Positions 2 to 49,352 of a DNA stretch of 64,000 bases are shown piece by piece (position 1 is the first letter of the stretch; each line of letters opens with the position of its first letter). Source of the stretch: Piromyces finnis finn (taxonomy: Eukaryota; Fungi; Neocallimastigomycota); NCBI GenBank assembly GCA_002104945.1, contig MCFH01000013.1, positions 682,001 to 746,000 of the forward strand. The letters are read 5' to 3'. A model generated the notes under the pieces. The model searched no databases. It was not told the DNA's origin and worked only from the letters and a program-made list of their open reading frames with translations. The translations under genes and the position numbers were made by a program.

Positions 2-2113
2 ACAGATGTTACACGTGCCTTTGGTTACTTTAATTGTTTAGGTAGTTTAAATGCTAGTCCATGGATTGTTAAAATGGAATTAGACTTTGGAGATAATAAT
101 CAAAATGGTACTGGTATCCATCTTACCTCAGAATCTGATAAGCATGATGAAGAAGCAGCAGACATAAAGCTTAAACTTGGTAATAATCATAGTGATGAAT
201 TCTTAGTATTGACAAATGGTGCTGTATTAGATGCAATTCGTTGTGGTGCCGACGCTAATAATAATGAAACCCCTGGATTTAGTTTATGTACATTAGATGA
301 TACTGCACAAATTATTGTTGATATTGCAAGAAGTGCATTAGGTAATGAAAGTAGCAAGCGTAATAAAGGTACATATCAATATCAAGGTATTAGCAAGAAT
401 GCTAGATCAACAACCGGTTGGGGTGCAGCAGCAACTAAAATTAGAGATGTTGCATTAAGTCACGGTGCATATGGTGCAAGAACTACAATAAATGCAAATC
501 AAAAAGTCAAGTCAAGTAAAGGTATGATGGTAATGGTGTTAGGTTTAAGAGATTTAGTTGAGACAGCACAAAGATGGATAGGCGCTAGACGTGGCTCAAC
601 TGAAACTGGTTCTGATAGTTTAGAGTTAATGAGCCTAAAAAGACGTGGTAGTGATGCTGCCATAAAAATGGGAAAAAGAAAGGATGGAGAATTATCTATT
701 CCACCATCAATTGAACCACCAACAGGTCAATTAGCTCTCGTTTTTACAGATATTAAGAATTCGACAGCATTATGGGAAACACATGCTATAGCTATGAGAA
801 ATTCAATTAAATTACATAATATGAGAATGCGTGCATTATTAAAACAATATGGAGGTTATGAAGTTAAAACAGATGGTGATAGTTTTATGGTTAGTTTTGT
901 AGATTTAATGTCAGCTGTTCAATGGTGTTTAGATGTTCAAACCGAACTTATTAAAATTGATTGGCCACCAGAAATTTTAGAAAGTGAAGATGGGGAAGAA
1001 ATTTGGTGGGATACCATTAATGGTGAACCAGTCTATGATGACGAATATCTAGATGATGAAGATATTGATGATGATATAGATGATGACCTTAATGATGATG
1101 ATGAAGATAATTTAATATATCAAGAAAAAGAGGATATTCCATTGGAAACTAGAATAGCCATGAGAAAAAAGAATAGTATTGCATTATTATTTAGAGGTCT
1201 CTGTGTTCGTATGGGTATTCATTATGGTACACCATTGTGTGAAATGGATCCAACAACAGGTCGTATGGATTATTTTGGACCTATGGTTAATCGTGCCTCT
1301 AGAATTTGTTCAGCCGCACAAGGAGGACAAATCTTTATCAGTTCAGAAGTTGTCCGAGAAATCACTAAAAGAAAAGGAGGTGATCCATCATTAATTAGAA
1401 TGAATAATACATTAGATGAAAAGATTGCTGATTCTATGAATATTAAAACATGGATTATTGGTGAAAAGAAATTAAAAGGTTTGGAAACACCAGAAGTACT
1501 TCATTGTATGTATCCTAAACAATATTACTTACGTCATGATTACTTTACTTGGATGCAAAACCAAAAGCAAGAAAGTACTAATAATATTGGAAATCTCATG
1601 GATATTCGTATGAATCCAATAGATATCAATTCTTTAAAAATGAATCGTAGTTCAGAACCTACTAGAATTGATAGAAACTATGTACAAACTCTTGGTAATT
1701 TATGTCTACGTTTAGAGTTTTTAGCTGTTAATGCTCAAAATATCTGTTTTAATAATCAAAACTTTGATGAAAGAATACCCGTATACCCATATCTCATTAA
1801 TTCATCAAGTATATCTATTCCAATAGAAGCTACAGAAAAGGAATTAACAGCTGCTCTTGAAGGAATAGCTATACGTATTGAGAATGCTGTAAGTATTCTT
1901 ACTTTAATTCAAAGTAGTCCTCTTAATCGTATATTAAAAACTCTTGGTTCATATATTGATGTAAGTCCTAATCAAATATTGACCGCTTTACAAGAATATG
2001 TACTTGCAATGAAAGAAAGAGATGAACGTCTCGAACGTATTAGAAATGAAAGAAGAGAACGTGAAAGACGTATAAAGAATAGAGCATCAAAAGCAGCAAA
2101 TACTTCCATTTAA
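2..2113 (+). CDS. CYR1: Adenylate cyclase, 3' part (end of PP2C-like domain, class III catalytic domain, C-terminal coiled coil); runs off the window's left edge
   Basis: Frame open from base 2 (TDVTRAFGYF...). Catalytic motifs PPTGQLALVFTDIKNST, YEVKTDGDSFMV, RGLCVRMGIH, RMDYFGPMVNRASR match fungal adenylate cyclases. Stop TAA at 2111-2113. Confidence 0.95.
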   Translation, partial: TDVTRAFGYFNCLGSLNASPWIVKMELDFGDNNQNGTGIHLTSESDKHDEEAADIKLKLGNNHSDEFLVLTNGAVLDAIRCGADANNNETPGFSLCTLDDTAQIIVDIARSALGNESSKRNKGTYQYQGISKNARSTTGWGAAATKIRDVALSHGAYGARTTINANQKVKSSKGMMVMVLGLRDLVETAQRWIGARRGSTETGSDSLELMSLKRRGSDAAIKMGKRKDGELSIPPSIEPPTGQLALVFTDIKNSTALWETHAIAMRNSIKLHNMRMRALLKQYGGYEVKTDGDSFMVSFVDLMSAVQWCLDVQTELIKIDWPPEILESEDGEEIWWDTINGEPVYDDEYLDDEDIDDDIDDDLNDDDEDNLIYQEKEDIPLETRIAMRKKNSIALLFRGLCVRMGIHYGTPLCEMDPTTGRMDYFGPMVNRASRICSAAQGGQIFISSEVVREITKRKGGDPSLIRMNNTLDEKIADSMNIKTWIIGEKKLKGLETPEVLHCMYPKQYYLRHDYFTWMQNQKQESTNNIGNLMDIRMNPIDINSLKMNRSSEPTRIDRNYVQTLGNLCLRLEFLAVNAQNICFNNQNFDERIPVYPYLINSSSISIPIEATEKELTAALEGIAIRIENAVSILTLIQSSPLNRILKTLGSYIDVSPNQILTALQEYVLAMKERDERLERIRNERRERERRIKNRASKAANTSI

Positions 2114-29800: not shown

Positions 29801-32542
29801 TTAAACTTTATTTATAACATTACTTTTGTGTAAACAAGCTTCTTTTTTTTTTTTCATAATATTCTTATTTTACTATTAAAAATTTAATGATTAAGGGTAT
29901 TAATTTTTTTTTATTTTCCTAATTCTTATTTATTATTTAAAACAAGGTTTTGTTACACATAAAAAATTTTTTAAACAATTTTCCTTAATAATATAAATTT
30001 AATTTATTTGTTTTATATAATAATTAACTTTATATATTATAAGAACTATTAATACTATTTTATATATAATTATTAATAGAGGATTGTAAAGTACTTAATT
30101 ATCACATTAACATAGTATGATAATGCATTCTTTTATTAGAAGAAGAGGTAGACATACAAAAGAATTTATTATAAAATACCAATACAAAAAGTAGAAATAA
30201 CAGTATTTTTATAGACATTAATAAAGTATGTATTTGTATACATTTTAACAAAAAAAGTACTGATCTACATAATTTAATTAAAATATATATAGGAATCTAA
30301 ATATTAAGGTATTAATATTATTCAAATTTTAGATTATAGTTATCCCATTTAACCCAAAGCATTTTAGTATTAAGATGATGAAAAAAAAAACTTTTATTCC
30401 TGATGGTTCAACAGTTAAAATGAATGTGATTAATTTAAAAAATATTTTTGAAAAATAAAAAAGGAAAACAGAAATATTAATTATATATATAAAGCTAAAG
30501 TGAAAGTACTTAAATAATTAATAAAAAGTATAAACTATCTATATATATTTTTTTTCATACCATAATTATTTAATAAGGAATATTTTATTAACAATTGAAT
30601 TGATGTAATTTATAAGAAAGGATATATATATATATAATATATAGAGAATTAAAATAGATATAAAAAGATGTAAAGTCATAACTAATAAATTAATATGTAA
30701 TAAAGTTATATAAAATTATGGATATTATTATATAGCATTTAATATTACCAAGAATGTTCAAGTAGCCATTTTAAAACACTAAAAAAAAACTAACTTTTAA
30801 TATTATAAATTAATTTATCCATTTTAATTAATATGATAATTAAATGTTAATCGTTTCATACAAAATTAATTATTATTATAAATTTTGATTATATGATAAT
30901 GTTTTAATATAAAATAATATATATAATATTTTGTAAATCTAGCCTGGTATGTTAAATAAAAATACACAGCTCATAACGGCGGTAGTGCTGTTTTAGGATG
31001 AAGATCATTTTTAATTAATTTTTATATAATCATAATTTTTTTCAATATAAATATTCTATTAGTATTATTTGTTTTTATTTATAATTATCATTGGTTTAAA
31101 TATATAAATTAGGCTTTTTACAAATGGTTACACTAGCTCAATATTTAAATCTAATAAATTAAAAAACCCAATTTGATATTTTTTTTAGGGATATTTTTTT
31201 TTTAAACTTTACTATTTATCCAATTTTTTTTAGTTTAAATTAAATTGTAATATATATTTATATTATTTTTTTAAAACATCATATATTATATTATATTATG
31301 ATTATAAATTATTCCTATTTGTTATATTAAAAATTGACTTTATGGAAAATTATTTCATTTATTAGAGTATATTAAATATGTATTATAATATATTATGTAT
31401 ATATATAATTAATTTATTTTCTGAAAAAAAAGAGACAAAATAGTCAATTGGATTAAATAATATATATTATCAATTGATTCATATATATTATAGTTTGTAT
31501 ATAAATATGTACATTTTATTTCATTTTTATTTCATACAATTTATAGTTTATTTCTTATTAAATCGTTTACTGAGACAAAAAATTTTATTTATTATAAAAC
31601 ATATAGTATAATAATATTTAATTAATTTTATTCTTGTACTAAAACTGGATTTTGATTTAAATATAAATTTAAGTTTATAGAAACTTGATTTTTTTATATT
31701 AAAAATTCAATAGATGATGAATAAATTTTTTAACATATTTTTTTTTAATTTATTTCAAAATCTTATTTATTACAGATTAGCTTAGTTTTTTTTTCTTTCT
31801 CAAAAAAAAAAAAAAAAATAAAATAAAATGCATAATTCTAATATAATATTAATATAAAAAATAAAATAAAATTCTATTTAATAATAACCAGGAAATATTA
31901 TAATTATAATATAGATCACTTTGAAAACTATATAAATATCAGATATTTCCCTTTTTTTTTTTTTTAATATATATTTAAGAATTTTTTTAATAATTTTAAA
32001 GTTTTAATAATATTATCATATATGAAAATAAAATACTTTTAAAAAGTATTTTAAAATAGTATAAAAGTATTTTATATATATTAATAAATATAACATTAGT
32101 TGATAATTAAATGTTATAGAGCTTCGATAGTTTTAATATATATATATATAATATAATCATTATTATATTAATGAAAATAATATTATTAAATTAAAAAGTC
32201 CAAATAAAAAAATTATGAATTATTACAATTATTAATTGAAAATAATTTTTTTTTTAAAAAAGTTATTATATTAATAAAAGTAGGTAATTAAAAAAAATAA
32301 TATTTATATTGAAAATGGTATTATTTTAATATCAATAAAAGTAGATAGTTAAAATATAATATCTATATATATTTTTATTGCTTTTTCAACTATTATTAAT
32401 ATAAATCTATATTCTATATTTTTAAAGAATTTCATTTGAATTATACCATTTGAAATAAGCAATTTATAAAATATAAGTGAAAAAAAAAAAAAAACATACC
32501 CATTAATAATATTTATAATAATAAGAAAATATAAATTTAAAA

Positions 32543-34827
32543 ATGAATGAAAAGCTCAAGGAGATAGAAAGAAACATTGATCTTTCAATATTTCATATAA
32601 AAAATAGGTAGGCATTCTAGTAATAGTATCTTTACAATATAGCTTTAAATTTAACTTTTTTTTTTTTTAAAAAAAATTAGAAAAAAAACTAAAAACAATA
32701 AAAAGAATAGAACTGACTATGATATAAAACAAGAAACCTTTAGAAAGCAAGAAAAATTTAGAAGAACAGTACTGGCAACAAAAGCTATTGTTAGTCAAAA
32801 ATTATATAAAATATATAGTAATAGTTTGGAAAAGTATTTTAATGATAAATGGAAATTAAGTAGAGCTGTAAGTATAAAATACAATGAAAAAAAATTCTTT
32901 TAATTTTTATTATAAGGAAAATATATTAATATAAATTATATTTGTCTTTTTAATAATTTCAGCAAGTATATCGTTTTTTGGATTGTGCAAAAATTATTGA
33001 GGTGTGTATTTTTTTTTTTTAATATTATATATATCATTCAATATTTGTATTAATAATATATTTAAATATTATATATATTTCATTAAAAACAACAACAATA
33101 GAAATTAAGTGACTTTGAATTACAACGTAAGCTTTTATTATATATTTATATATAATTACATGAAAACTAAATAGGATTAAATTTTTATTATTAAATTATT
33201 GTATTATAGCTTATAATGAAAGAGTATGTCGTTCATTAAATAAACTTACAAAGAATACAAAATATATGCGTATATTGTGGCAGGAAGTATTAAATAGTAT
33301 TAATAACAATCTTCAATTAGTTAATAGTGTATTGGTTGAAAAGGTAGGTTAATTTAAAAAAAAAAAAGTATAGTTTTTGTTATTGAACATAAATTAAATA
33401 TATATTTTGGCATATTATAATAGGTTTATGAAGATTTGATTAGTAGAAATGTTATCCCATCTAATGCTTCATTGCTAAAAATGGATGATAATGAGGATAT
33501 TAATGAATCAGCAAATGTTATTATAACAAAATCATCATCCTCAATTCCATTTGATATATTTGAATTTAGTATTAGGTCAAGCAATATGAAAACTACATCA
33601 CCTAAAATTAGCAATGATGAAAAACTTTCATGCAATACTTATAACAATGAATCCTATAATAATGGGTATCAAAACAATCAGTTCATAGCTCATTCACTAA
33701 ATGAAAGTGATAATAATTCTCCAAGAATTGAAAATAATACAAATAGTTGCGCTAGTAGTCCAGGTGCTGTTACATCAGATATCAAGGATCAAAAATACTA
33801 TAATAAAAGTAAAAGTCCAATATCTTTAGCAATTGAATCTCAACCAAAAACCCAATCAAATCAACAAAATCTAGTGGCAAATAACTATTGTCCAATAAGT
33901 ACTCCCCCACAACAAATCATTAATTCTTTCCCGGATAGTCCCGAATATGATAAAAACAACAATAATAATAACAACAATTTGAAGCCTGTAAAGATTGAAG
34001 AAGAAAATAAAATGTACAATACAACTCCATCTTCAAATACAAATAGTTATAATTGTTATCCAACCCCAAGCTATACTATGAAAAGTATAGTAGATCAAAG
34101 TAATAACAATAACAATAATAATAACAACAATAGTAATAATAACAATAATAACTACAACAATAATTTAAGCAATTCAAAAACAAATACTATCATTAATCAA
34201 TTTAATGGAAATCCAACTAATTCATTTATTTCAAATGGAATGGCTACCACTAATTATTGGTATCAAAATACTACAAATAATTCAAATAATGTTGAAAATA
34301 TTAATAATACTAGTAATTCAAATAATAACTTTAATAATTATCCGTCTCCATTTGAATTTTTTAGACAACAACATCCAATAAGAAATGAACCAATTAATCA
34401 AGGCTGTTATAATATAAACAACAGCAATAATGGAGGTTTAGTATCTACAAATATATACCCAAATAATACAAATACTAATACCACAAATAATAGTAACACT
34501 TCTATTGCAACAACAACAACAACAACTAATGTGAATGACTATTCCAGTCAAAATGGACAAAATTATAATATATCCAGTTCAAATAATAATTATCCATATA
34601 ATACTCGAAATTGTATAAATAATAATCATAATAATAACAACAATCAAAACAATTTTAATAGTAATTATAACCCAATGAATACTAATTATATTAAAGGAAA
34701 TATTAGTAATAATTATCCATCACCAAATATGAAAAATACCACTTTAAATAAAACAATGGATATAAAAAATATCCATAATGACATAAATAATAACAATTGT
34801 AATAATGGCTATAATAATTATAATTAT

Positions 34828-34875
<48 letters not shown>

Positions 34876-35065
34876 AATAATAATAATTATAATTATAATT
34901 ATAACAACAATAATAACAACAACAACAATTATTATTATAATTATAGCAACAACAACAACAACAACAATAATAATAACAATAACAATAATTATAATTATAA
35001 TAATAGTAATAGTAGCAATAATAATAATAATTGTAGCAATGTTACTAATTGTAATAATGATAATT

Positions 35066-35096
<31 letters not shown>

Positions 35097-35295
35097 AAGC
35101 AACAATAACATTTTTTATAGTAATAATAGTAATACATTTAATTCTAATAGTAATAATAATGATGATAATAAAAACTATAATAATCAAACTTCTTCCAATA
35201 CTAATTTTAATAATAGAAATACTACGCTGGTCGAAAGTACTAATATTAAAGTTACTAAAAAGAAGAATTTTATGGATTTAGAAAATTTAATTTAA
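32543..35295 (+). CDS. Putative DNA-binding protein: small helical N-terminal domain plus about 600 aa Asn-rich disordered tail, 6 exons
   Basis: Exons 32543-32607, 32681-32867, 32963-33001, 33102-33126, 33210-33343, 33424-35295 join in frame with GT-AG ends. Domain reads ...FRRTVLATKAIVSQKLYKIYSNSLEKYFNDKWKLSRAQVYRFLDCAKIIEKLSDFELQPYNERVCRSLNKLTKNTKYMRILWQEVLNSINNNLQLVNSVLVEKVY. The ORF track shows only the last exon. Confidence 0.8.
34800..35105 (+). repeat. Coding (AAC)n/(AAT)n poly-Asn tracts
   Basis: Long AAC/AAT runs encoding N/Y-rich tracts inside the last exon. Confidence 0.95.
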
Positions 35296-39002: not shown

Positions 39003-40822
39003 TTATTTGTGAATACAACCAGTGTTTTGAGTTAATTCAATTGGACATTCAACTTCATCAAAGACCATAGCTGGGTTGTCAGATCCAAGGAACCAATCGA
39101 AACGCCAGTAACAAGCATCACGAATAGCTTCTGGAAGAATATCACATTCACTACGCTTACCAACACCACCATAACGGTTACCCCAACCATCAGTATCAGT
39201 ATTGAATTGAGTGGAACAACCATTGAAAATACCGACACCACCACCTGGAATTTGGAGATCGAAGTGGTTAGCACCAAGATCACCACCAGTGTTAGTAACT
39301 TGGACGACTAATTGTTTACCTCTAGCTGGACCTTCAGTGAAGGTAATAGCGTAACAACGACAACACCAATCAGCTTCAGTTAAACCTTCAATAGAAGCAG
39401 CGGCATAACCGTAAGATAAAACTTCAGAAACAGCCCATGGTTGTTGGTTCAAACACATGTAAGATTCACCACCTTCACAACCAGACTTAGCACTGTAGTT
39501 AGTGATTGGGGTAATACCATCAATTTTACATTGTTGAACTGGTTGGGTGACAAGAGCCTTTTCTGGCCATGAACAAGATGGTTTACAACAATCCCAGTAA
39601 CGGGTAGTGGTACCGACCTTTTTACCAATTGGGTATTCGTGTTCCCAGTCCATGTAATCATTGTTAAGAATATCATTACATTCACACATCTTAATTTCAC
39701 AAGCCTTACCATCTTCCCAACCCCAGAGGAAACCATCTTGTTCATTGTAAACAGTACAAGTATCACACCATTTTTGTCCGTGTGGACCCTTACCTGTAGC
39801 TGGTCTTAATTCAGCATTAACATCTGGTTCACATTGTTTGTAACCTTCGCTACCCTTACAAGTAGTACCAGCTTGACAACATTTTTCTTCCATTCCAGCA
39901 CCACCACATTGCTTCCAAGCTTCAACACAGTCAGTTTGATCAGTGTTAACAGTACATACAGCCTCAAATGGTTTCATTGTGTATGAACCATTGTTTTGAG
40001 TTTTGGTTGGTTGTACAGTGCTCTTTTGAGTAGTTTTTTGAGTAGTTCTTTGAGTGGTCTTTTGAGTAGTAGCTTGTTTGACAATACCACACCATTCACC
40101 ATTTTCAACACCCCAGTCACCTGATTAATATTTAATTTTATATATATATTTCAATTGTTAATATATATAAAAGGAATACTTTTTATAACTTTCAATTTCT
40201 ATTAATAATAATAAATATAAAATACCTGATTCATCAGAATAAACTATATCATTTCCATTACAGCATGGATAATCTGGAAGAGACCAGCATGAAGCACCAG
40301 AAGTTGGTTGTTCTGGTTCAATACCACACCTTTACAATTAAATACATCAATTTTATTATTATTTATTTTCATTTATTTTTTTTACTTTTTTATTAAAAAT
40401 ACTCATATATCTATCTAAAGTAAAGATAGTTAAAACTTACCAGTTACCATTTTCAACACCCCAATTACCAGTTTCATCAACATAGACTACTTCGGCTCCT
40501 GGTTGGCAACATGGATAATCTTTATATATTTAATGAATAATAAAATATATTATTTATTTTAATAAGTATATTTAATAATCTCGTTTATTTTTACTTTTTA
40601 TGTTAAAAGATATTAATATTTCTGTGGAATTTTTATATAAATTTAATTCGTCAATGTATTTTTCTCCTTAATTTTCGAATTAACCATATTGATTTTTTAC
40701 TGATTTTCAAACATAAACTAAAATTAATCCATTTAATATTTATTAAAAGTACCTGGAAGGAAGGAGCAAGCTTTAACTGAAACAAGTAAAGCAGTAGCTA
40801 ATAAAGCATTTTTGAATTGCAT
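39003..40822 (-). CDS. Secreted GH45 endoglucanase: signal peptide, 2 fungal dockerins (NCDD/CBM10 family), Thr/Gln linker, CBM1, a third CBM10-like module, GH45; 4 exons
   Basis: Exons 40822-40753, 40519-40441, 40329-40226, 40120-39003. Dockerins YPCC...WGVENGNWCGI and YPCC...WGVENGEWCGI; CBM1 CVEAWKQCGG...CCQAGTTC...YKQC; GH45 TTRYWDCCKPSCSW and GGDLGANHFDLQIPGGGVGIFNGC. Confidence 0.93.
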
Positions 40823-44385: not shown

Positions 44386-47300
44386 TCATGGAACAAAATT
44401 ATGATCTCCATTGGTTGCGCTGGCCCTCCTGGCCTGTCTTACTGTTTCTTCAGCATTGACGCTCTTGGATGTTGCTTCAAACCTTTTGAACATTGACCAT
44501 TGCTGGCCAATAGCAAAAGGCATGATTTTGGTTAGAAGTTCCGCGGTTACCGTCAAGAATGGTGTTCCTTCATTAGTACCAGATTGAATCTGACGCTTAC
44601 AAAGTTCTTTCCATTCCCTTGAATTGTAATTAATATTGTTAAAATTTCTTCCCCCAAGAAGGAATTTAAATATTTTACTGCACACACTAGAATAATCATA
44701 CACATTAATATTCACCGGATTATTAGAACTATTACTATCATTAACTAAATTACTATCTAAATTAGAATTATTATCTTCACTATATCTATTATTACTAATA
44801 TTATTACTATTATTATTATTATTATTATTATAACTACTACTACTATTGTTATTATTATTGTTGTTATTATTACTATTGTTACTATTACTATTAATGTTAT
44901 TGCTATCTCTACTGATATTAACATTTTCATTATTATTGATAGGACTGTTGGAATTACGTTGACTAAAAAAATTTAATAGCTGGACTATAGAATCATAATG
45001 TTTAATACGGATATCTCTAAATGTTGGACAATCTAATAACCAATGTTTAATACTTTGAACACCACACTTGCAACATGGACAGTAGTTAGAACAAACTGGA
45101 TCAACAAATTTAGCAGCTTTGGCAATTCTAGCATCCAACTTGTATCCGCTTCTTGCTTTCAATAGCCAGTAGAAGCCATAGGCAAACTCTGGATACTCAT
45201 AACATAATTTAATAAAATCTTTAGTTTCAATAAATTTATTATCATCATAATATTGCGCTTTGATTGAATTCCCTTTGAGATCTTTCCAATAAAAGTTTTT
45301 AACTGCTTTAACATCTTCATGCTTCTTTAGTTTTTTATCAAGTGTCCTACTTGATTTGCACCACGTGTATTTTCTAAATTTAGGAATGTAATTGACAAGG
45401 TATGAGATAATACAATTTGAGTTTTTCCATTTGTTAAAACATCTAACCTGAGCTAACGCACATTTGGCTGACAATGGAGGAATATTCAAATCTTTTGAGA
45501 TAGAGTATAAAGATATAAACGATACAGCTTTATGAACTCCGGCTACCCATCGTATTCCTTTGTTGACATGCTTCTGAGCAATCCTAGACCTAGCTTTATT
45601 GGATCCAAGTAATGGTGCAAAGTATGAAACTCTGCTGATTACTTGTGAGTTAAGTACTAGTTTTTTGAAAGGAATAGGAATATTAGGATTTCTTAAGAAT
45701 TTACTGATTGAGAAAAGTCCTTTCAAAACCTTGTTATTAAGAGTTTTAATTACTGGTTTAAGGGACAAATTCTTATCAAATGGAACACCAAGATAAGTAT
45801 AACAATCAGTAGTTGGAATGGGTTGTCCTGCTAAGTAAAATGTTGGATCTCTCTTGTTCTGATTTTCTATTGATTCAGGGCGAATCACCATCGTTGAACA
45901 TTTCTGGATACCAAATTCCATTTCATTATACAATGCCCATTCATTAACTCTTCTAAGCATCTTTTTTAAGCATCCTCTTGTTGGAGCACAAATAACTATA
46001 TCATCTGCAAAAAGTCCACCACAGCATCGAGTGTCACCTAAACTGATTCCGAGATCTTCGCACTCTTTAAAAATATCATTAATAAAGAGATTAAAAAGAA
46101 TAGGCGAAAGTGGGCAACCTTGACGGACTCCTTTCTTCACATCAAAAGATTTCGAAAATTGTCCATCTAATTTGACATTAGCCTTAGATGTTAAATATAA
46201 ATTTTTGATAAATTGTAAACTCTTACCTCGGATTCCTAAACAATCTAATTTATGGATAATATTACCGATTGGGACTGAATCATATGCTTTCCTGAGTTCT
46301 AAAAAGGCCAAATATGTCTCTTTATTATCTAATTGACGTCTACGGCATATTTCTTGGATTGAAATGAAAAGACTAATACTTTCTTCTTTTTTTCGAAAAC
46401 CAAATTGTTCAAGTCTAATGAAATTATTCTTTAGACCATATTCTGAGATTCTAGTGGTGACAATTTTGGAAATCAACTTAATACCATTATTGATAAGTGA
46501 TATACCTCGATAGTTATCACAATCTGTCAAATCTCCCTTCTTAGGAATGGAAACAATACTGGATTCATTCCATGAGTTGGGGAAATCTCCATCCCAAATA
46601 CGGTTGAATAATTTAAGAATAAAATTTAAACCATAAGCATCATTATCTGAAGTGGTATTACCAGAAGAATTATTACCTGTAGCATTATTAGAATCATTAA
46701 TTGATGGAATTAATGCTTTGTAAAATTCAATTGGAATACCATCCGGACCTGATGCTTTATAATTTGGAGTAGAGAGGATAGCTGACTTGACTTCATCAAT
46801 ACTAATATCTTGGTTGATATCCCACTCATCAAGCATAGGAAGTGAAAAATGTTTATTCGTTGGTTCTTCATACCAATGCTCCAAATCAAGACTTACACCA
46901 TTTGGATCTGATACAAGGTTTTCGAAATGATCATGCCACACTTCTAGTTGTTCTTCCGTAGCAACAACTAATTCTCCATTTTTATTTTTAATTGGTTGAG
47001 CAATAAAGAAAGAATCTTTTCCAATTTTTGCAGTTTTCTTGATCCATTTCCAGGCCTTCTTAGGATTATGACTCTTCATATACTCACATCTTGTTTTAAT
47101 CCAATGAAGATATTCTTGCTTCCTAAATTCATTACATCTTTTGTGGATGTAATCAATGAGCTTACGGTAGATTTTAATTCTTTTAATAAATTCATCTATA
47201 TCATAAATTCTTTTTTTTTTAAATCTCTTATACAACTTCATTTTGATTTTTTGAAGATTAAAAATTTGTTGTGAAATATGAAATGAAGACTTTATAACAT

Positions 47301-48476
47301 TATTTGCTGAGGTAATACTGAGCTCGTCTGCAATTGAAAAAGCAGTTGAAGTAAACTCTTTGGAAAGTTCATCTGTAGAAACATTAGAATCGTTGAGTTT
47401 TGCTGAAAGTATTTGGAATTTATTATGACTGATAATAGATTCCTTTTCCTCAATACATTTTAATCTATTCCATTTCAGAATTTTCTTAGGAACATTAAAG
47501 TCATTAGAAAAATCTTCCATAGGAATAATTTTACCATTAATAAGAAGTGGCTTATGGTCTGATACAGGATAAAAATTATTTATAAATGATCCTGAGTGAA
47601 TAAGATCTTTCATCTTCGAATTGATAAGAGCATGGTCAATGTCGGAAGATTGATCACCTCGAGTCCAAGAGATAGTAGACCCTCTAAGCGGAAGAATTTC
47701 CCAATCTCCTAATCCATTAGTTGATAACCAGTTGGATAATTTTACTTTAGACATATTAAAATCACCAACAAGAATCGATGGATGGGATGAATGAGTTTGT
47801 AACCACAAGCGAACTTCTAACTTTGCATGATCAACATAGATGTTGTGATGACTATGAGGCATATAAACATTTCCAATCGAGCATTTGAATCTATTCCAAA
47901 GACTAAAAGTATAAATAGAAATAATATACTTTCCAGAGAAGTTTTCAAGTGAGGCTTGACACGAATTGTGAAAACCTAAATATAAACCTCTCATTCCAGG
48001 AACTGATTCGTCAGCTTTCTTGAAAAAGTGTCTATAGTTCCGCAAAGTAACACGACAAGGATAATCTGTATTCGATCCAGAACCATTACCAGTTTCTTGG
48101 AAACATAAAAATAATGGTTTGAAAATAGCTGTGAAATAGCTAATACTATCTTTCTTTTCGTGATTCCACCCATTGGTGTTCCAACTAAGACAAAAAGAAA
48201 AGTTATCAGGCTTGTTGGATGAGGAAGAATCGTTGCTATTATTACTATTATTAAAGTCATCATTACTAATGGATGATGCATCAGAGGAATAAGTAGAACT
48301 ATTACTAGATGGCTGTGAAATTGAAGAACTATCAACTATTGAACTGTTATCAGAGTTGATAGAACTATTAGAATTAATTGTTGAATGTTGAGATTGAAAT
48401 TGTGTTTGCTGTAGAACTGGAATATTTTCATGATGGGAAACTTGTTGAAGATCTTGTTGAAGATCAACCTCAATAA
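44386..48476 (-). CDS. LINE ORF2-like polyprotein: AP endonuclease, reverse transcriptase, C-terminal CCHC zinc finger (no own start codon in this copy)
   Basis: APE: SWNTNG, FQET, GNVY, GDFN, DIDH, SDH. RT: KASGPDGIP, NYRGISL, QFGFR, FLELRKAYDSV, GVRQGCPLSPILF, FADD, YTYLG. Zinc finger CPCCKCGVQSIKHWLLDC. The ORF-track start at 48495 lies in flank/TSD. Confidence 0.93.
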
Positions 48477-48490
48477 AGATAAAATATAAT
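48477..48490. repeat. Target-site duplication, right copy
   Basis: AGATAAAATATAAT identical to 44098-44111. Confidence 0.9.
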
Positions 48491-49352
48491 ATCAAATGTG
48501 TTGTTATAATAATTTAAATTATAACTTTCGTAAGTTGACATAATATGCTATATCAATTATATATATAACAATAAGTGGATTTGAGTTAATGTAGTAGTAT
48601 ATTTAAGTGCTTTACCTCCATTATTGAGGTTGTTATTTCATATTAAAATCTTCATACAATTTGATTTTCTCCATTTATCATAAAATATAATTTAATAACT
48701 ATGTAACTACATAACTACTTAATTCTCTTTTAAAGAATTACAAGCTAATAAATGAATTTTTTTATATACAAAACCAATGTTACTAAAATATCGAATAAAT
48801 ATTAATATTAAATAATATAAAAATTATTTATTACATTTTTTTGTAAATATATTTTAAAACTTTAAATTTACTATCGTTTTTATACTTTATAATTTTACAT
48901 ATACTTTAATACTGTTAATAAAAAAATGTTGCGGAAATATCATCAAAAACCATATCTAAATATTTTCAAAATATCCGGGAAAAAATCCTAAAATTGCTAT
49001 ATTAACAAATACTAATTTTATATTTTCAATGTATAATAAAAATCAAATATCATATCATAATAGCAAAATACACCATAATGAAATATCTATTTTATATAAT
49101 AAATTTTTCTCTTAATAAAAATTTTTAAAATTTTTATTAATAATAAACTAATAATTTTGGGTATTCATTAAATATAATAATAATATCTAATGACAAAAAA
49201 AAACCATAATTATTATTAATTATGATAAAGGTATATATTATTAGTTATTTTTACTTTTCATATACTATGGTATATATATATATTTTTTTTAAGTTATATT
49301 TTTAAATTTTTGATATTTTTGTAAAAATGGGTAAAAATTATTTAATAATTTT

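What the first reader, a model, noticed from the sequence alone, without database searches (positions are those of the whole stretch)
32543..33450. Hidden five-intron domain resembling an uncharacterised phage/bacterial HTH-like family: candidate domesticated transcription-factor family
The ORF track misses five short exons that assemble into QKLYKIYSNSLEKYFNDKWKLSRAQVYRFLDCAKIIEKL...PYNERVCRSLNKL...RILWQEVL...VNSVLVEKV. From memory this matches, motif by motif, a widespread unnamed prokaryotic/phage pattern roughly LYR..y.tFeeYc.erW..sR..aYrlidaa.v.enL...P.nErq.RpL.kL...q..aW..av....ta..V..vV. The SRAQVYR helix looks like an HTH recognition helix. Fusion to a long Asn-rich tail is typical of transcription factors, and five introns imply old domestication. 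There is precedent in the viral KilA-N origin of fungal SBF/APSES factors. I know no functional description of this family in fungi.
Basis: partly seen in the sequence, partly recalled or inferred. Interest (0 to 1): 0.75.

Follow-up and report, generated by a model that had tools for sequence, protein, structure and literature searches.

The report
Phage-type HTH gene of gut fungus
A real six-exon gene of the gut fungus Piromyces finnis begins with a DNA-binding-type domain clearly related to an unnamed domain of phages and bacterial plasmids, and it belongs to an undescribed protein family found so far only in flagellated (zoosporic) fungi.

Summary
The five short exons and the long sixth exon (32543-35295, + strand) form one gene. 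A cDNA-derived contig removes introns 1-4 exactly as modelled. A Neocallimastix orthologue has introns at the same five sites. Intron 5 is retained in the contigs of all four runs, so the fusion to the Asn-rich tail rests on comparative evidence only.

The roughly 150-residue domain defines a conserved family without a Pfam model. It was found only in Chytridiomycota, Monoblepharidomycetes, Neocallimastigomycota and one blastoclad, always as 'hypothetical protein'.

The recalled prokaryotic pattern is real. The fungal profile matches an unnamed family of bacterial plasmid proteins (hhalign probability 98.3%, E 1.6e-14). It also hits one ORF in each of 80 phage contigs (up to 54 bits). In phages the domain sits in front of Dam or MT-A70 adenine methyltransferases or DUF5131. 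On two Bacteroidota plasmids it lies directly after parA.

Predicted structures (pLDDT 89-91) resemble the ParB/Noc/KorB helix-turn-helix DNA-binding domain. The ParB N-terminal domain is absent.

The most likely function is a sequence-specific DNA-binding regulator. This is inferred, not shown.

This scan had already noted paralogues of the family on other DNA of this genome.

The parts
32543..32607 (+). Exon 1. It holds the start codon and the N-terminal motif (E-x-E-R-N-I-D-L-S-I-F-H) that matches the family's EEQRIDLKVLHH.
   Evidence: The ATG and the first residues (MNEK) are shared with orthologue P0055. The X1 contig covers 32552-32607. Weak family-HMM hit to positions 1-18.
32608..32680 (+). 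Intron 1 (73 nt, GT..AG). It splits a codon after its second base.
   Evidence: Removed in X1 contig record 1, by record arithmetic. Same site in the Neocallimastix orthologue.
32681..32867 (+). Exon 2. It holds a basic NLS-like stretch, the long first helix, the first HTH helix, and the start of the invariant SRA(QVYR) motif.
   Evidence: Family HMM E 1.3e-18, positions 15-66. A phmmer search with this exon found 43 family clusters. Bacterial HMM E 0.002.
32868..32962 (+). Intron 2 (95 nt, phase 0), between SRA and QVYR.
   Evidence: Joint 32867>32963, GT..AG, in run X1. Same site in P0055, and about the same site in paralogue P0039.
32963..33001 (+). Exon 3 (13 codons). It encodes the putative recognition helix QVYRFLDCAKIIE.
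   Evidence: Family HMM E 1.4e-5, positions 66-78. 95% DNA identity to the orthologue. SRAQVYR is invariant in 19-21 family members.
33002..33101 (+). Intron 3 (100 nt, phase 0). The site is conserved across fungal phyla.
   Evidence: Removed in the X1 contig. Same site in Spizellomyces P0046 and Gonapodya P0028. Many public gene models, including this gene's own (P0001), read through this site.
33102..33126 (+). Exon 4 (25 nt, KLSDFELQ plus one base). It encodes the loop after the recognition helix.
   Evidence: In the X1 contig by arithmetic. 96% DNA identity to the orthologue.
33127..33209 (+). Intron 4 (83 nt, phase 1).
   Evidence: Joint 33126>33210, GT..AG, in run X1. Same site in P0055.
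33210..33343 (+). Exon 5. It holds the helices with the P-x-x-E-R-x-C-R-x-L and L-W motifs and the first half of the last helix.
   Evidence: Family HMM E 2.2e-13, positions 88-132. Bacterial HMM E 0.016.
33344..33423 (+). Intron 5 (80 nt, phase 0, GTAGGT..TAG). It is retained in all RNA contigs seen. If kept, the reading frame stops at TAA 33350-33352 and gives a 152-residue product.
   Evidence: Retention: 33210-34091 and similar spans are continuous in runs X1-X4. Intron status: same site in P0055, 43% DNA identity, 80 vs 138 nt, in-frame stops in both species. Product lengths.
33424..35295 (+). Exon 6. Its first ~12 codons complete the last helix of the domain. A 623-residue tail (37% Asn) follows and ends in the motif MDLENLI, then stop TAA.
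   Evidence: ORF. The 12-mer at 33424 ranks 3rd of 50,916. The orthologue's ORF runs 670 codons and ends in the same MDLENLI. The first 59 residues are 73% identical to the orthologue. Composition. No Pfam hit.

Best explanation
This is an expressed nuclear gene of Piromyces finnis. Its first ~150 residues form a compact all-helical helix-turn-helix domain of the ParB/KorB/Noc type. The domain descends from a DNA-targeting module of phages and plasmids. In phages that module sits in front of adenine methyltransferases or DUF5131. On some plasmids it takes the ParB place after ParA.

Shown here:
- The gene structure.
- The homology to the fungal, bacterial and viral families.
- The predicted fold.
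- The old age of the gene in zoosporic fungi.

Inferred:
- The domain binds specific double-stranded DNA. The invariant SRAQVYR helix would lie in the major groove.
- A basic stretch just upstream may serve nuclear import.
- The long Asn-rich tail with its conserved C-terminal MDLENLI motif recruits partners, so the protein acts as a lineage-specific transcription regulator.
- Retention of intron 5 would give a truncated 152-residue product that lacks half of the last helix and the whole tail. It could therefore limit the amount of full-length protein.
For: Gene structure.

Fungal family: 43 clusters found from exon 2 alone, all named ones from zoosporic fungi. 29 columns are invariant in 19 members.

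Prokaryotic and viral homology.

Domain partners in phages: Dam, MT-A70 and DUF5131 follow the domain in the same ORF.

ParB slot after parA in Emticicia and Spirosoma plasmids.

Fold:
- Models with pLDDT 89 and 91.
- Noc DNA-binding domain Z 7.6 with 114 of 116 residues aligned.
- Spo0J Z 6.9, ParB Z 6.6, KorB Z 5.9-6.9, SopB Z 5.7.
- The top Foldseek rows are all ParB-family DNA-binding domains.
- Phage proteins reach TM 0.63-0.73.
- Weak support from borfam_49 and from a cluster carrying Plasmid_parti_N/DUF3102.

Age and single origin: the shared intron 3 site, and the fungi falling on one side of a branch with SH-aLRT 100.

Coding tail.
Against: No DNA binding, nuclear localisation or target genes have been shown for any member.

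The structural Z-scores (5-8) are in the range the tool calls middling for helical proteins. The Rubisco chaperone Raf1, which is not a DNA-binding protein, scores as high (Z 7.3).

All four RNA data sets show intron 5 retained. The abundant transcript may therefore encode only a truncated domain.

No hit reached significance in Pfam, PHROGs, NCBIfam or PDB sequence searches.
Confidence: 0.62

Rival explanations
1. The domain binds DNA, but the protein is not a classical activator or repressor. It is the surviving targeting arm of a phage-type DNA methyltransferase or partition system. It works in chromatin marking, adenine-methylation guidance or reading, or DNA segregation.
For: In viral contigs the same domain precedes Dam or MT-A70 adenine methyltransferases. 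Cyanobacterial members lie next to or are named as cytosine methylases. Bacteroidota members follow parA. Early-diverging fungi carry abundant 6mA (PMC12695648 and PMC12019607, abstracts listed).
Against: The fungal proteins carry no methyltransferase, ParA-interaction or ParB N-terminal domain. No link to any 6mA enzyme was tested. The family is absent from the named Mucoromycota hits, although those fungi also have 6mA.
Confidence: 0.2
2. The helical domain has lost DNA binding and serves as a protein-binding scaffold, as the similarly folded alpha domain of Raf1 does.
For: Raf1 alpha domains score as high as the ParB DNA-binding domains (Z 6.0-7.3). Fold similarity alone does not show function.
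Against: The most conserved stretch of the family is the putative recognition helix (SRAQVYR invariant). Its R and Y are also invariant in the bacterial family. Sequence homology links the domain to phage and plasmid proteins, not to Raf1.
Confidence: 0.1
3. The main product is the short 152-residue protein from the intron-5-retaining transcript. The Asn-rich ORF is not joined to it.
For: All four runs' contigs keep 33344-33423, and no spliced joint was listed.
Against: Contigs drop rare variants. The last helix of the fold spans the exon 5/6 junction (residues 145-157 of the orthologue model). The residues at 33424 continue the family alignment without a gap. The intron is unconserved while both flanks are conserved in frame. 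The tail ORF is kept for 623 and 670 codons with the same end in two genera.
Confidence: 0.08

Closest known systems
Unnamed phage/plasmid HTH module. It occurs as the N-terminal domain of phage Dam, MT-A70 and DUF5131 proteins, in cyanobacterial plasmid 'hypothetical proteins', and in ParA-adjacent proteins of Bacteroidota plasmids.
   Same: Homologous over ~110-120 columns: hhalign probability 98.3%, and the fungal HMM scores up to 54 bits. The motifs are shared: L-Y-R, T-F-E-x-Y, R-x-x-x-Y-R-L-I-x-A-A, P-x-x-E-R, and L-x-x-W.
   Different: The fungal genes have spliceosomal introns and a long low-complexity tail. They lack the enzyme domain and the bacterial C-terminal domain. The fungi form their own long-branched group.
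Central HTH DNA-binding domain of ParB, Spo0J, Noc, KorB, SopB and VirB.
   Same: These are the best solved-structure matches for both models, covering nearly the whole DNA-binding domain. Noc 6y93: Z 7.6, 114 of 116 residues, rmsd 3.3. The order of helices around the HTH is the same.
   Different: There is no ParB/Srx CTP-binding N-terminal domain, no ParA partner, and no significant sequence match. Identity is 8-18%.
KilA-N domain of phages and DNA viruses, which gave rise to the fungal APSES/SBF-MBF factors (eLife 2016, PMC4862756, listed).
   Same: The same evolutionary theme: a viral or prokaryotic DNA-binding domain taken into an early fungus and built into regulators.
   Different: A different fold and family; no KilA-N/APSES Pfam hit was obtained. 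APSES factors are kept in Dikarya. This family was found only in zoosporic fungi.
Borrelia PF49 / Plasmid_parti and DUF3102 plasmid and phage proteins.
   Same: Weak, recurrent signals. borfam_49 matches 6 of 19 members over the HTH region. A language-model feature search lists a cluster carrying Plasmid_parti_N/DUF3102.
   Different: None reaches a curated cut-off: best E 0.02, at 14.6 bits for the member shown against a cut-off of 60. These are leads only.

Membership tests
Zoosporic-fungus SRAQVYR family (unnamed, no Pfam model) | Domain-wide match to the family profile, including the invariant W-x-x-S-R-A-Q-V-Y-R and L-W motifs | tested here: met
   Exons 2, 3 and 5 hit the profile at E 1.3e-18, 1.4e-5 and 2.2e-13 in colinear order. 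The invariant residues are present in the exon translations.
Zoosporic-fungus SRAQVYR family (unnamed, no Pfam model) | Phase-0 intron directly after the recognition helix (C-A-x-V-L-K | ...) | tested here: met
   Window intron 3 lies at the same site as in Spizellomyces and Gonapodya and in Neocallimastix P0055.
Unnamed phage/plasmid HTH module | Profile-level homology to bacterial and viral members | tested here: met
   hhalign 98.3%, E 1.6e-14. The fungal HMM hits 130 of 130 bacterial proteins and one ORF in each of 80 viral loci. The bacterial HMM ranks the window's exon fragments first, but weakly (E 0.002 and 0.016).
ParB superfamily (ParB/Spo0J/Noc/KorB) | Central HTH DNA-binding domain fold | tested here: met
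   Family DNA-binding domains head all three structure searches, with Z 5.4-7.6. The Z values are moderate and the models are of relatives (P0042, P0055), not of the window's own joined protein.
ParB superfamily (ParB/Spo0J/Noc/KorB) | N-terminal ParB/Srx CTP-binding domain | tested here: not met
   No ParBc hit in the exons, in full-length fungal members or in bacterial relatives. The domain starts within 20 residues of the N-terminus.
ParB superfamily (ParB/Spo0J/Noc/KorB) | Works with a ParA ATPase and a centromere site | not testable with these tools
   Only two bacterial relatives were seen to lie after parA. Nothing comparable can be read from the fungal locus.
KilA-N / APSES | Match to KilA-N or APSES profiles | tested here: not met
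   No such Pfam hit at E up to 5-10.
Sequence-specific transcription factor (functional class) | Binds specific DNA and changes transcription | not testable with these tools
   Inferred from the fold, the conserved recognition helix, the basic stretch and the low-complexity tail. There is no experiment.

The most novel reading that the evidence does not exclude
The family is what remains of a phage-type HTH-adenine-methyltransferase gene captured by an early flagellated fungus. It still acts with the 6mA system of early-diverging fungi, guiding or reading adenine methylation at promoters, rather than as an ordinary activator. Intron-5 retention would switch the protein between a full-length form and a truncated, inactive form.
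Probability: 0.08. Interest if true: 0.85.

Novelty: new variant of a known kind. Interest (0 to 1): 0.62.

Why it matters
Zoosporic fungi, including the anaerobic gut fungi used for plant-biomass breakdown, have few studied regulators. This is a conserved, multi-copy family with a likely DNA-binding domain. It has no Pfam model, no name and no paper.

Its clear kinship to a phage and plasmid DNA-targeting module gives a second case, beside KilA-N/APSES, of a mobile-element DNA-binding domain built into fungal regulators.

It also names an equally unannotated prokaryotic family: at least 478 clusters (the best 120 listed are nearly all cyanobacterial, the rest unnamed), plus phage methyltransferase N-termini.

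The public gene models are wrong. The Piromyces model stops at 99 residues and the Neocallimastix model at 267, so routine annotation hides the family.

The function can be tested directly by DAP-seq or EMSA with a 150-residue domain.

Tried and rejected
Searches exon by exon found nothing usable:
- Pfam, none.
- PHROGs, one hit at E 0.095.
- PDB sequences.
- tblastn against phages.
- ESM Atlas features.

The tail (exon 6, residues 1-260) found no relatives.

The family profile found nothing in PDB sequences. It gave no consistent hit in PHROGs, Pfam or NCBIfam.

The word-indexed profile search with the fungal alignment returned only fungal proteins. The viral-contig scan with the fungal alignment found none.

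tblastn against the GenBank phage set found nothing significant with P0010, P0042 or two bacterial members. The phage link came only from IMG/VR contigs through the bacterial alignment.

Rejected readings:
- Bacterial contamination or recent transfer. The gene has spliceosomal introns, one at a site shared across phyla.
- Pseudogene. Exons are conserved between genera and a long ORF is kept.
- Membership of canonical ParB. The N-terminal domain is absent.

A 255-letter loose end before 32526 in run X1 looked like an upstream exon, but it is not in the window. It is left unexplained.

A second conserved C-terminal motif of some chytrid members (L-Q-P-x-L-N-G-R-W-V) is absent from the Neocallimastigomycota members.

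The donor lineage could not be resolved.

Full report
**Scope and rules followed.** The spliced model was never joined. Each exon was searched by reference. As a stored proxy I used natural proteins returned by the tools, above all P0055, the Neocallimastix orthologue. Read laying received 3,201 letters.

**The sequence.** The window has 20% G+C. It carries a GH45 cellulase, a LINE reverse transcriptase, and ankyrin and LRR genes. Translation of 32500-33520 in three frames, together with the GT/AG sites, gives one consistent model:
- Exon 1: 32543-32607
- Exon 2: 32681-32867
- Exon 3: 32963-33001
- Exon 4: 33102-33126
- Exon 5: 33210-33343
- Exon 6: 33424-35295

The introns are 73, 95, 100, 83 and 80 nt long, all GT..AG, with 11-18% G+C. 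By arithmetic the model has 773 codons. The tail is 37% Asn.

**Transcript evidence.** Four public runs from three studies hold the stretch. A 1230-nt contig of run X1 lies on 32552-32607, 32710-32867, 32963-32999 and 33210-34091. Joints 32867>32963 and 33126>33210 are listed. The unplaced 29 and 27 letters of the contig equal exactly 32681-32709, and 33000-33001 plus 33102-33126. So introns 1-4 are removed as modelled, and the contig is cDNA. The stretch 33344-33423 is continuous in contigs of all four runs, and no 33343>33424 joint appears. With it retained, the frame ends at TAA 33350-33352 and the product has 152 residues. Contigs cannot show that a spliced form is absent.

**A fungal family.** An exhaustive phmmer search with exon 2 (62 residues) gave 43 clusters at E below 1e-3.
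- The first, P0001, is 100% identical. It is 'hypothetical protein BCR36DRAFT_349337, partial [Piromyces finnis]'. This names the organism. It also shows that the public model (99 residues) runs into intron 3.
- The named members come from many chytrid orders: Geranomyces, Spizellomyces, Nowakowskiella, Rhizoclosmatium, Polychytrium, Cladochytrium, Chytridium, Homolaphlyctis and others.
- Further named members come from Gonapodya, Neocallimastix and Pecoramyces, and the blastoclad Paraphysoderma.
- All are 'hypothetical', and none has a Pfam family.
- An alignment of 19 domains (A1) has 29 invariant columns, including W-x-x-S-R-A-Q-V-Y-R and L-W.
- Its HMM, run on every stop-to-stop fragment of 32300-33700 on both strands, picks the exons in order: exon 1 to positions 1-18, exon 2 to 15-66, exon 3 to 66-78, exon 5 to 88-132.

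**Intron 5 and the tail.** P0055 (N. lanati) is the orthologue. It starts with the same MNEK, and its gene has introns at the same five sites. Between the two genera the exons are 74-96% identical in DNA. The five introns are 43-64% identical and differ in length; intron 5 is 80 vs 138 nt, with in-frame stops in both. The 12 residues from 33424 rank 3rd of 50,916 window 12-mers against the family's V-W-x-E-L-L columns, in register and without a gap. In the AlphaFold model of P0055:1-172, helix 145-157 spans this junction. The orthologue's exon-6 ORF runs 670 codons and ends in MDLENLI, like the window's 623 codons. Its public 267-residue model is therefore also wrong. I conclude that intron 5 is a true intron and that the tail is coding and joined to the domain. 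In the data at hand, however, the retained form dominates.

**Age.** The phase-0 intron after the recognition helix (window intron 3) lies at the same site in Spizellomyces and Gonapodya. More than a dozen public short models from other species read through that same site. The paralogue P0039 shares only some sites. The gene is therefore an old resident of fungal genomes.

**Fold.** Two models were made: P0042:42-196 (pLDDT 89, pTM 0.78) and P0055:1-172 (pLDDT 91, pTM 0.84). Both are all-helical.
- Foldseek's top PDB rows are Noc, P1 ParB, VirB and SopB DNA-binding domains, with E 0.4-2.
- The Foldseek-independent search gives Raf1 Z 7.3, KorB 6.9 and 6.0, Spo0J 5.9, SopB 5.7, ParB 5.6.
- The second model gives Noc Z 7.6 (114 of 116 residues), Spo0J 6.9 and 6.8, ParB 6.6, KorB 5.9.
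- These Z values are moderate, and the tool warns about helical proteins. The theme is nevertheless constant.
- Predicted phage proteins match better: BFVD E 1e-3 with TM 0.63, and an ESM Atlas phage DUF5131 protein with TM 0.73 over 142 residues.

**Prokaryotic and viral kin by sequence.** A tblastn search with P0042:42-196 against plasmids found 62 records, mostly cyanobacterial. The best was Emticicia at E 2e-4.
- In Emticicia and Spirosoma the gene follows parA directly. In Spirosoma the order is rep, parA, then this gene.
- In Gloeothece it follows cytosine methyltransferase genes.
- Ten such proteins have no Pfam family.
- The fungal HMM scores them 26-44 bits over positions 23-139.
- hhalign of A1 against A2 gives probability 98.3%, E 1.6e-14, 110 columns and 27% identity.
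- The A2 profile finds at least 478 clusters. Of the best 120 listed, all that carry a name are 'hypothetical' (a few UniRef entries say 'Site-specific DNA-cytosine methylase') and nearly all of these are cyanobacterial; the rest are unnamed metagenome entries. None has a Pfam domain. The fungal HMM hits all 130 tested.
- A2 also finds 91 relatives on IMG/VR viral contigs. The fungal HMM hits exactly one ORF in each of the 80 fetched loci, up to 53.9 bits.
- In eight of ten of these ORFs the domain precedes Dam, MT-A70 or DUF5131. This agrees with the structural DUF5131 match.
- Trees put all 21 fungal rows on one side of a branch (SH-aLRT 100). The donor is unresolved.

**Interpretation.** Shown: a real spliced gene, an undescribed zoosporic-fungus family, homology to an unnamed phage and plasmid DNA-targeting module, and a ParB-type HTH fold without the ParB N-terminal domain. 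Inferred: sequence-specific DNA binding through the SRAQVYR helix and a regulatory role of the tail. It works like a ParB/KorB DNA-binding domain, but it is not a ParB.

**Earlier scan notes.** Read after my own analysis, they report paralogues of the same family on other pieces of this genome with the same reading. They were not used as evidence.

Noticed in passing
window 33344-33423: Intron 5 is retained in the transcript contigs of all four runs (three studies), while introns 1-4 are spliced in run X1's transcript contig, the only one that spans them. This may be a regulated, detained intron that truncates the domain.
   Followed up: partly
window 32526 (run X1 loose end): One contig continues upstream of 32526 with 255 letters that are not in the window. 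An AG lies at 32524-32525, and the loose letters stay open in the gene's frame. It could be a 5' exon from elsewhere, a paralogue or a chimera. It is unexplained.
   Followed up: partly
P0001 (Piromyces finnis) and P0055 (Neocallimastix lanati; L015:4001-7369): Both public gene models of this gene are wrong. One stops inside intron 3 at 99 residues. The other splices out most of the 670-codon tail ORF.
   Followed up: yes
L004:3803-4585, L013:2288-3091, and P0068-P0187: A large prokaryotic family (at least 478 clusters, largely cyanobacterial plasmids) has no Pfam model. On two Bacteroidota plasmids it occupies the ParB position after parA.
   Followed up: partly
P0004, P0006, P0009, P0010, P0046 (C-terminal parts): Some chytrid members share a second conserved block (L-Q-P-x-L-N-G-R-W-V ... 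W-R) far downstream of the HTH domain. It is absent from the anaerobic-fungus members.
   Followed up: partly
structure searches: The alpha domain of the Rubisco assembly factor Raf1 (plants and cyanobacteria) scores as high as ParB DNA-binding domains against these models. This hints that Raf1's alpha domain has a ParB-HTH-like arrangement.
   Followed up: no
window 35272-35292: The C-terminal heptad MDLENLI is identical in Piromyces and Neocallimastix, after more than 600 poorly conserved Asn-rich residues. It may be a short docking motif.
   Followed up: partly
window 44386-48495 (-), 39003-39977 (-), 74-2113 (+): A LINE-type reverse transcriptase ORF of 1369 codons, a GH45 cellulase with an N-terminal extension, and an adenylate/guanylate cyclase domain ORF lie in the same window.
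   Followed up: no
window 33107>33955 and 34527>33958: High-depth 'joints' between CAA/AAC-rich stretches in several runs look like low-complexity assembly artefacts, not splicing.
   Followed up: no
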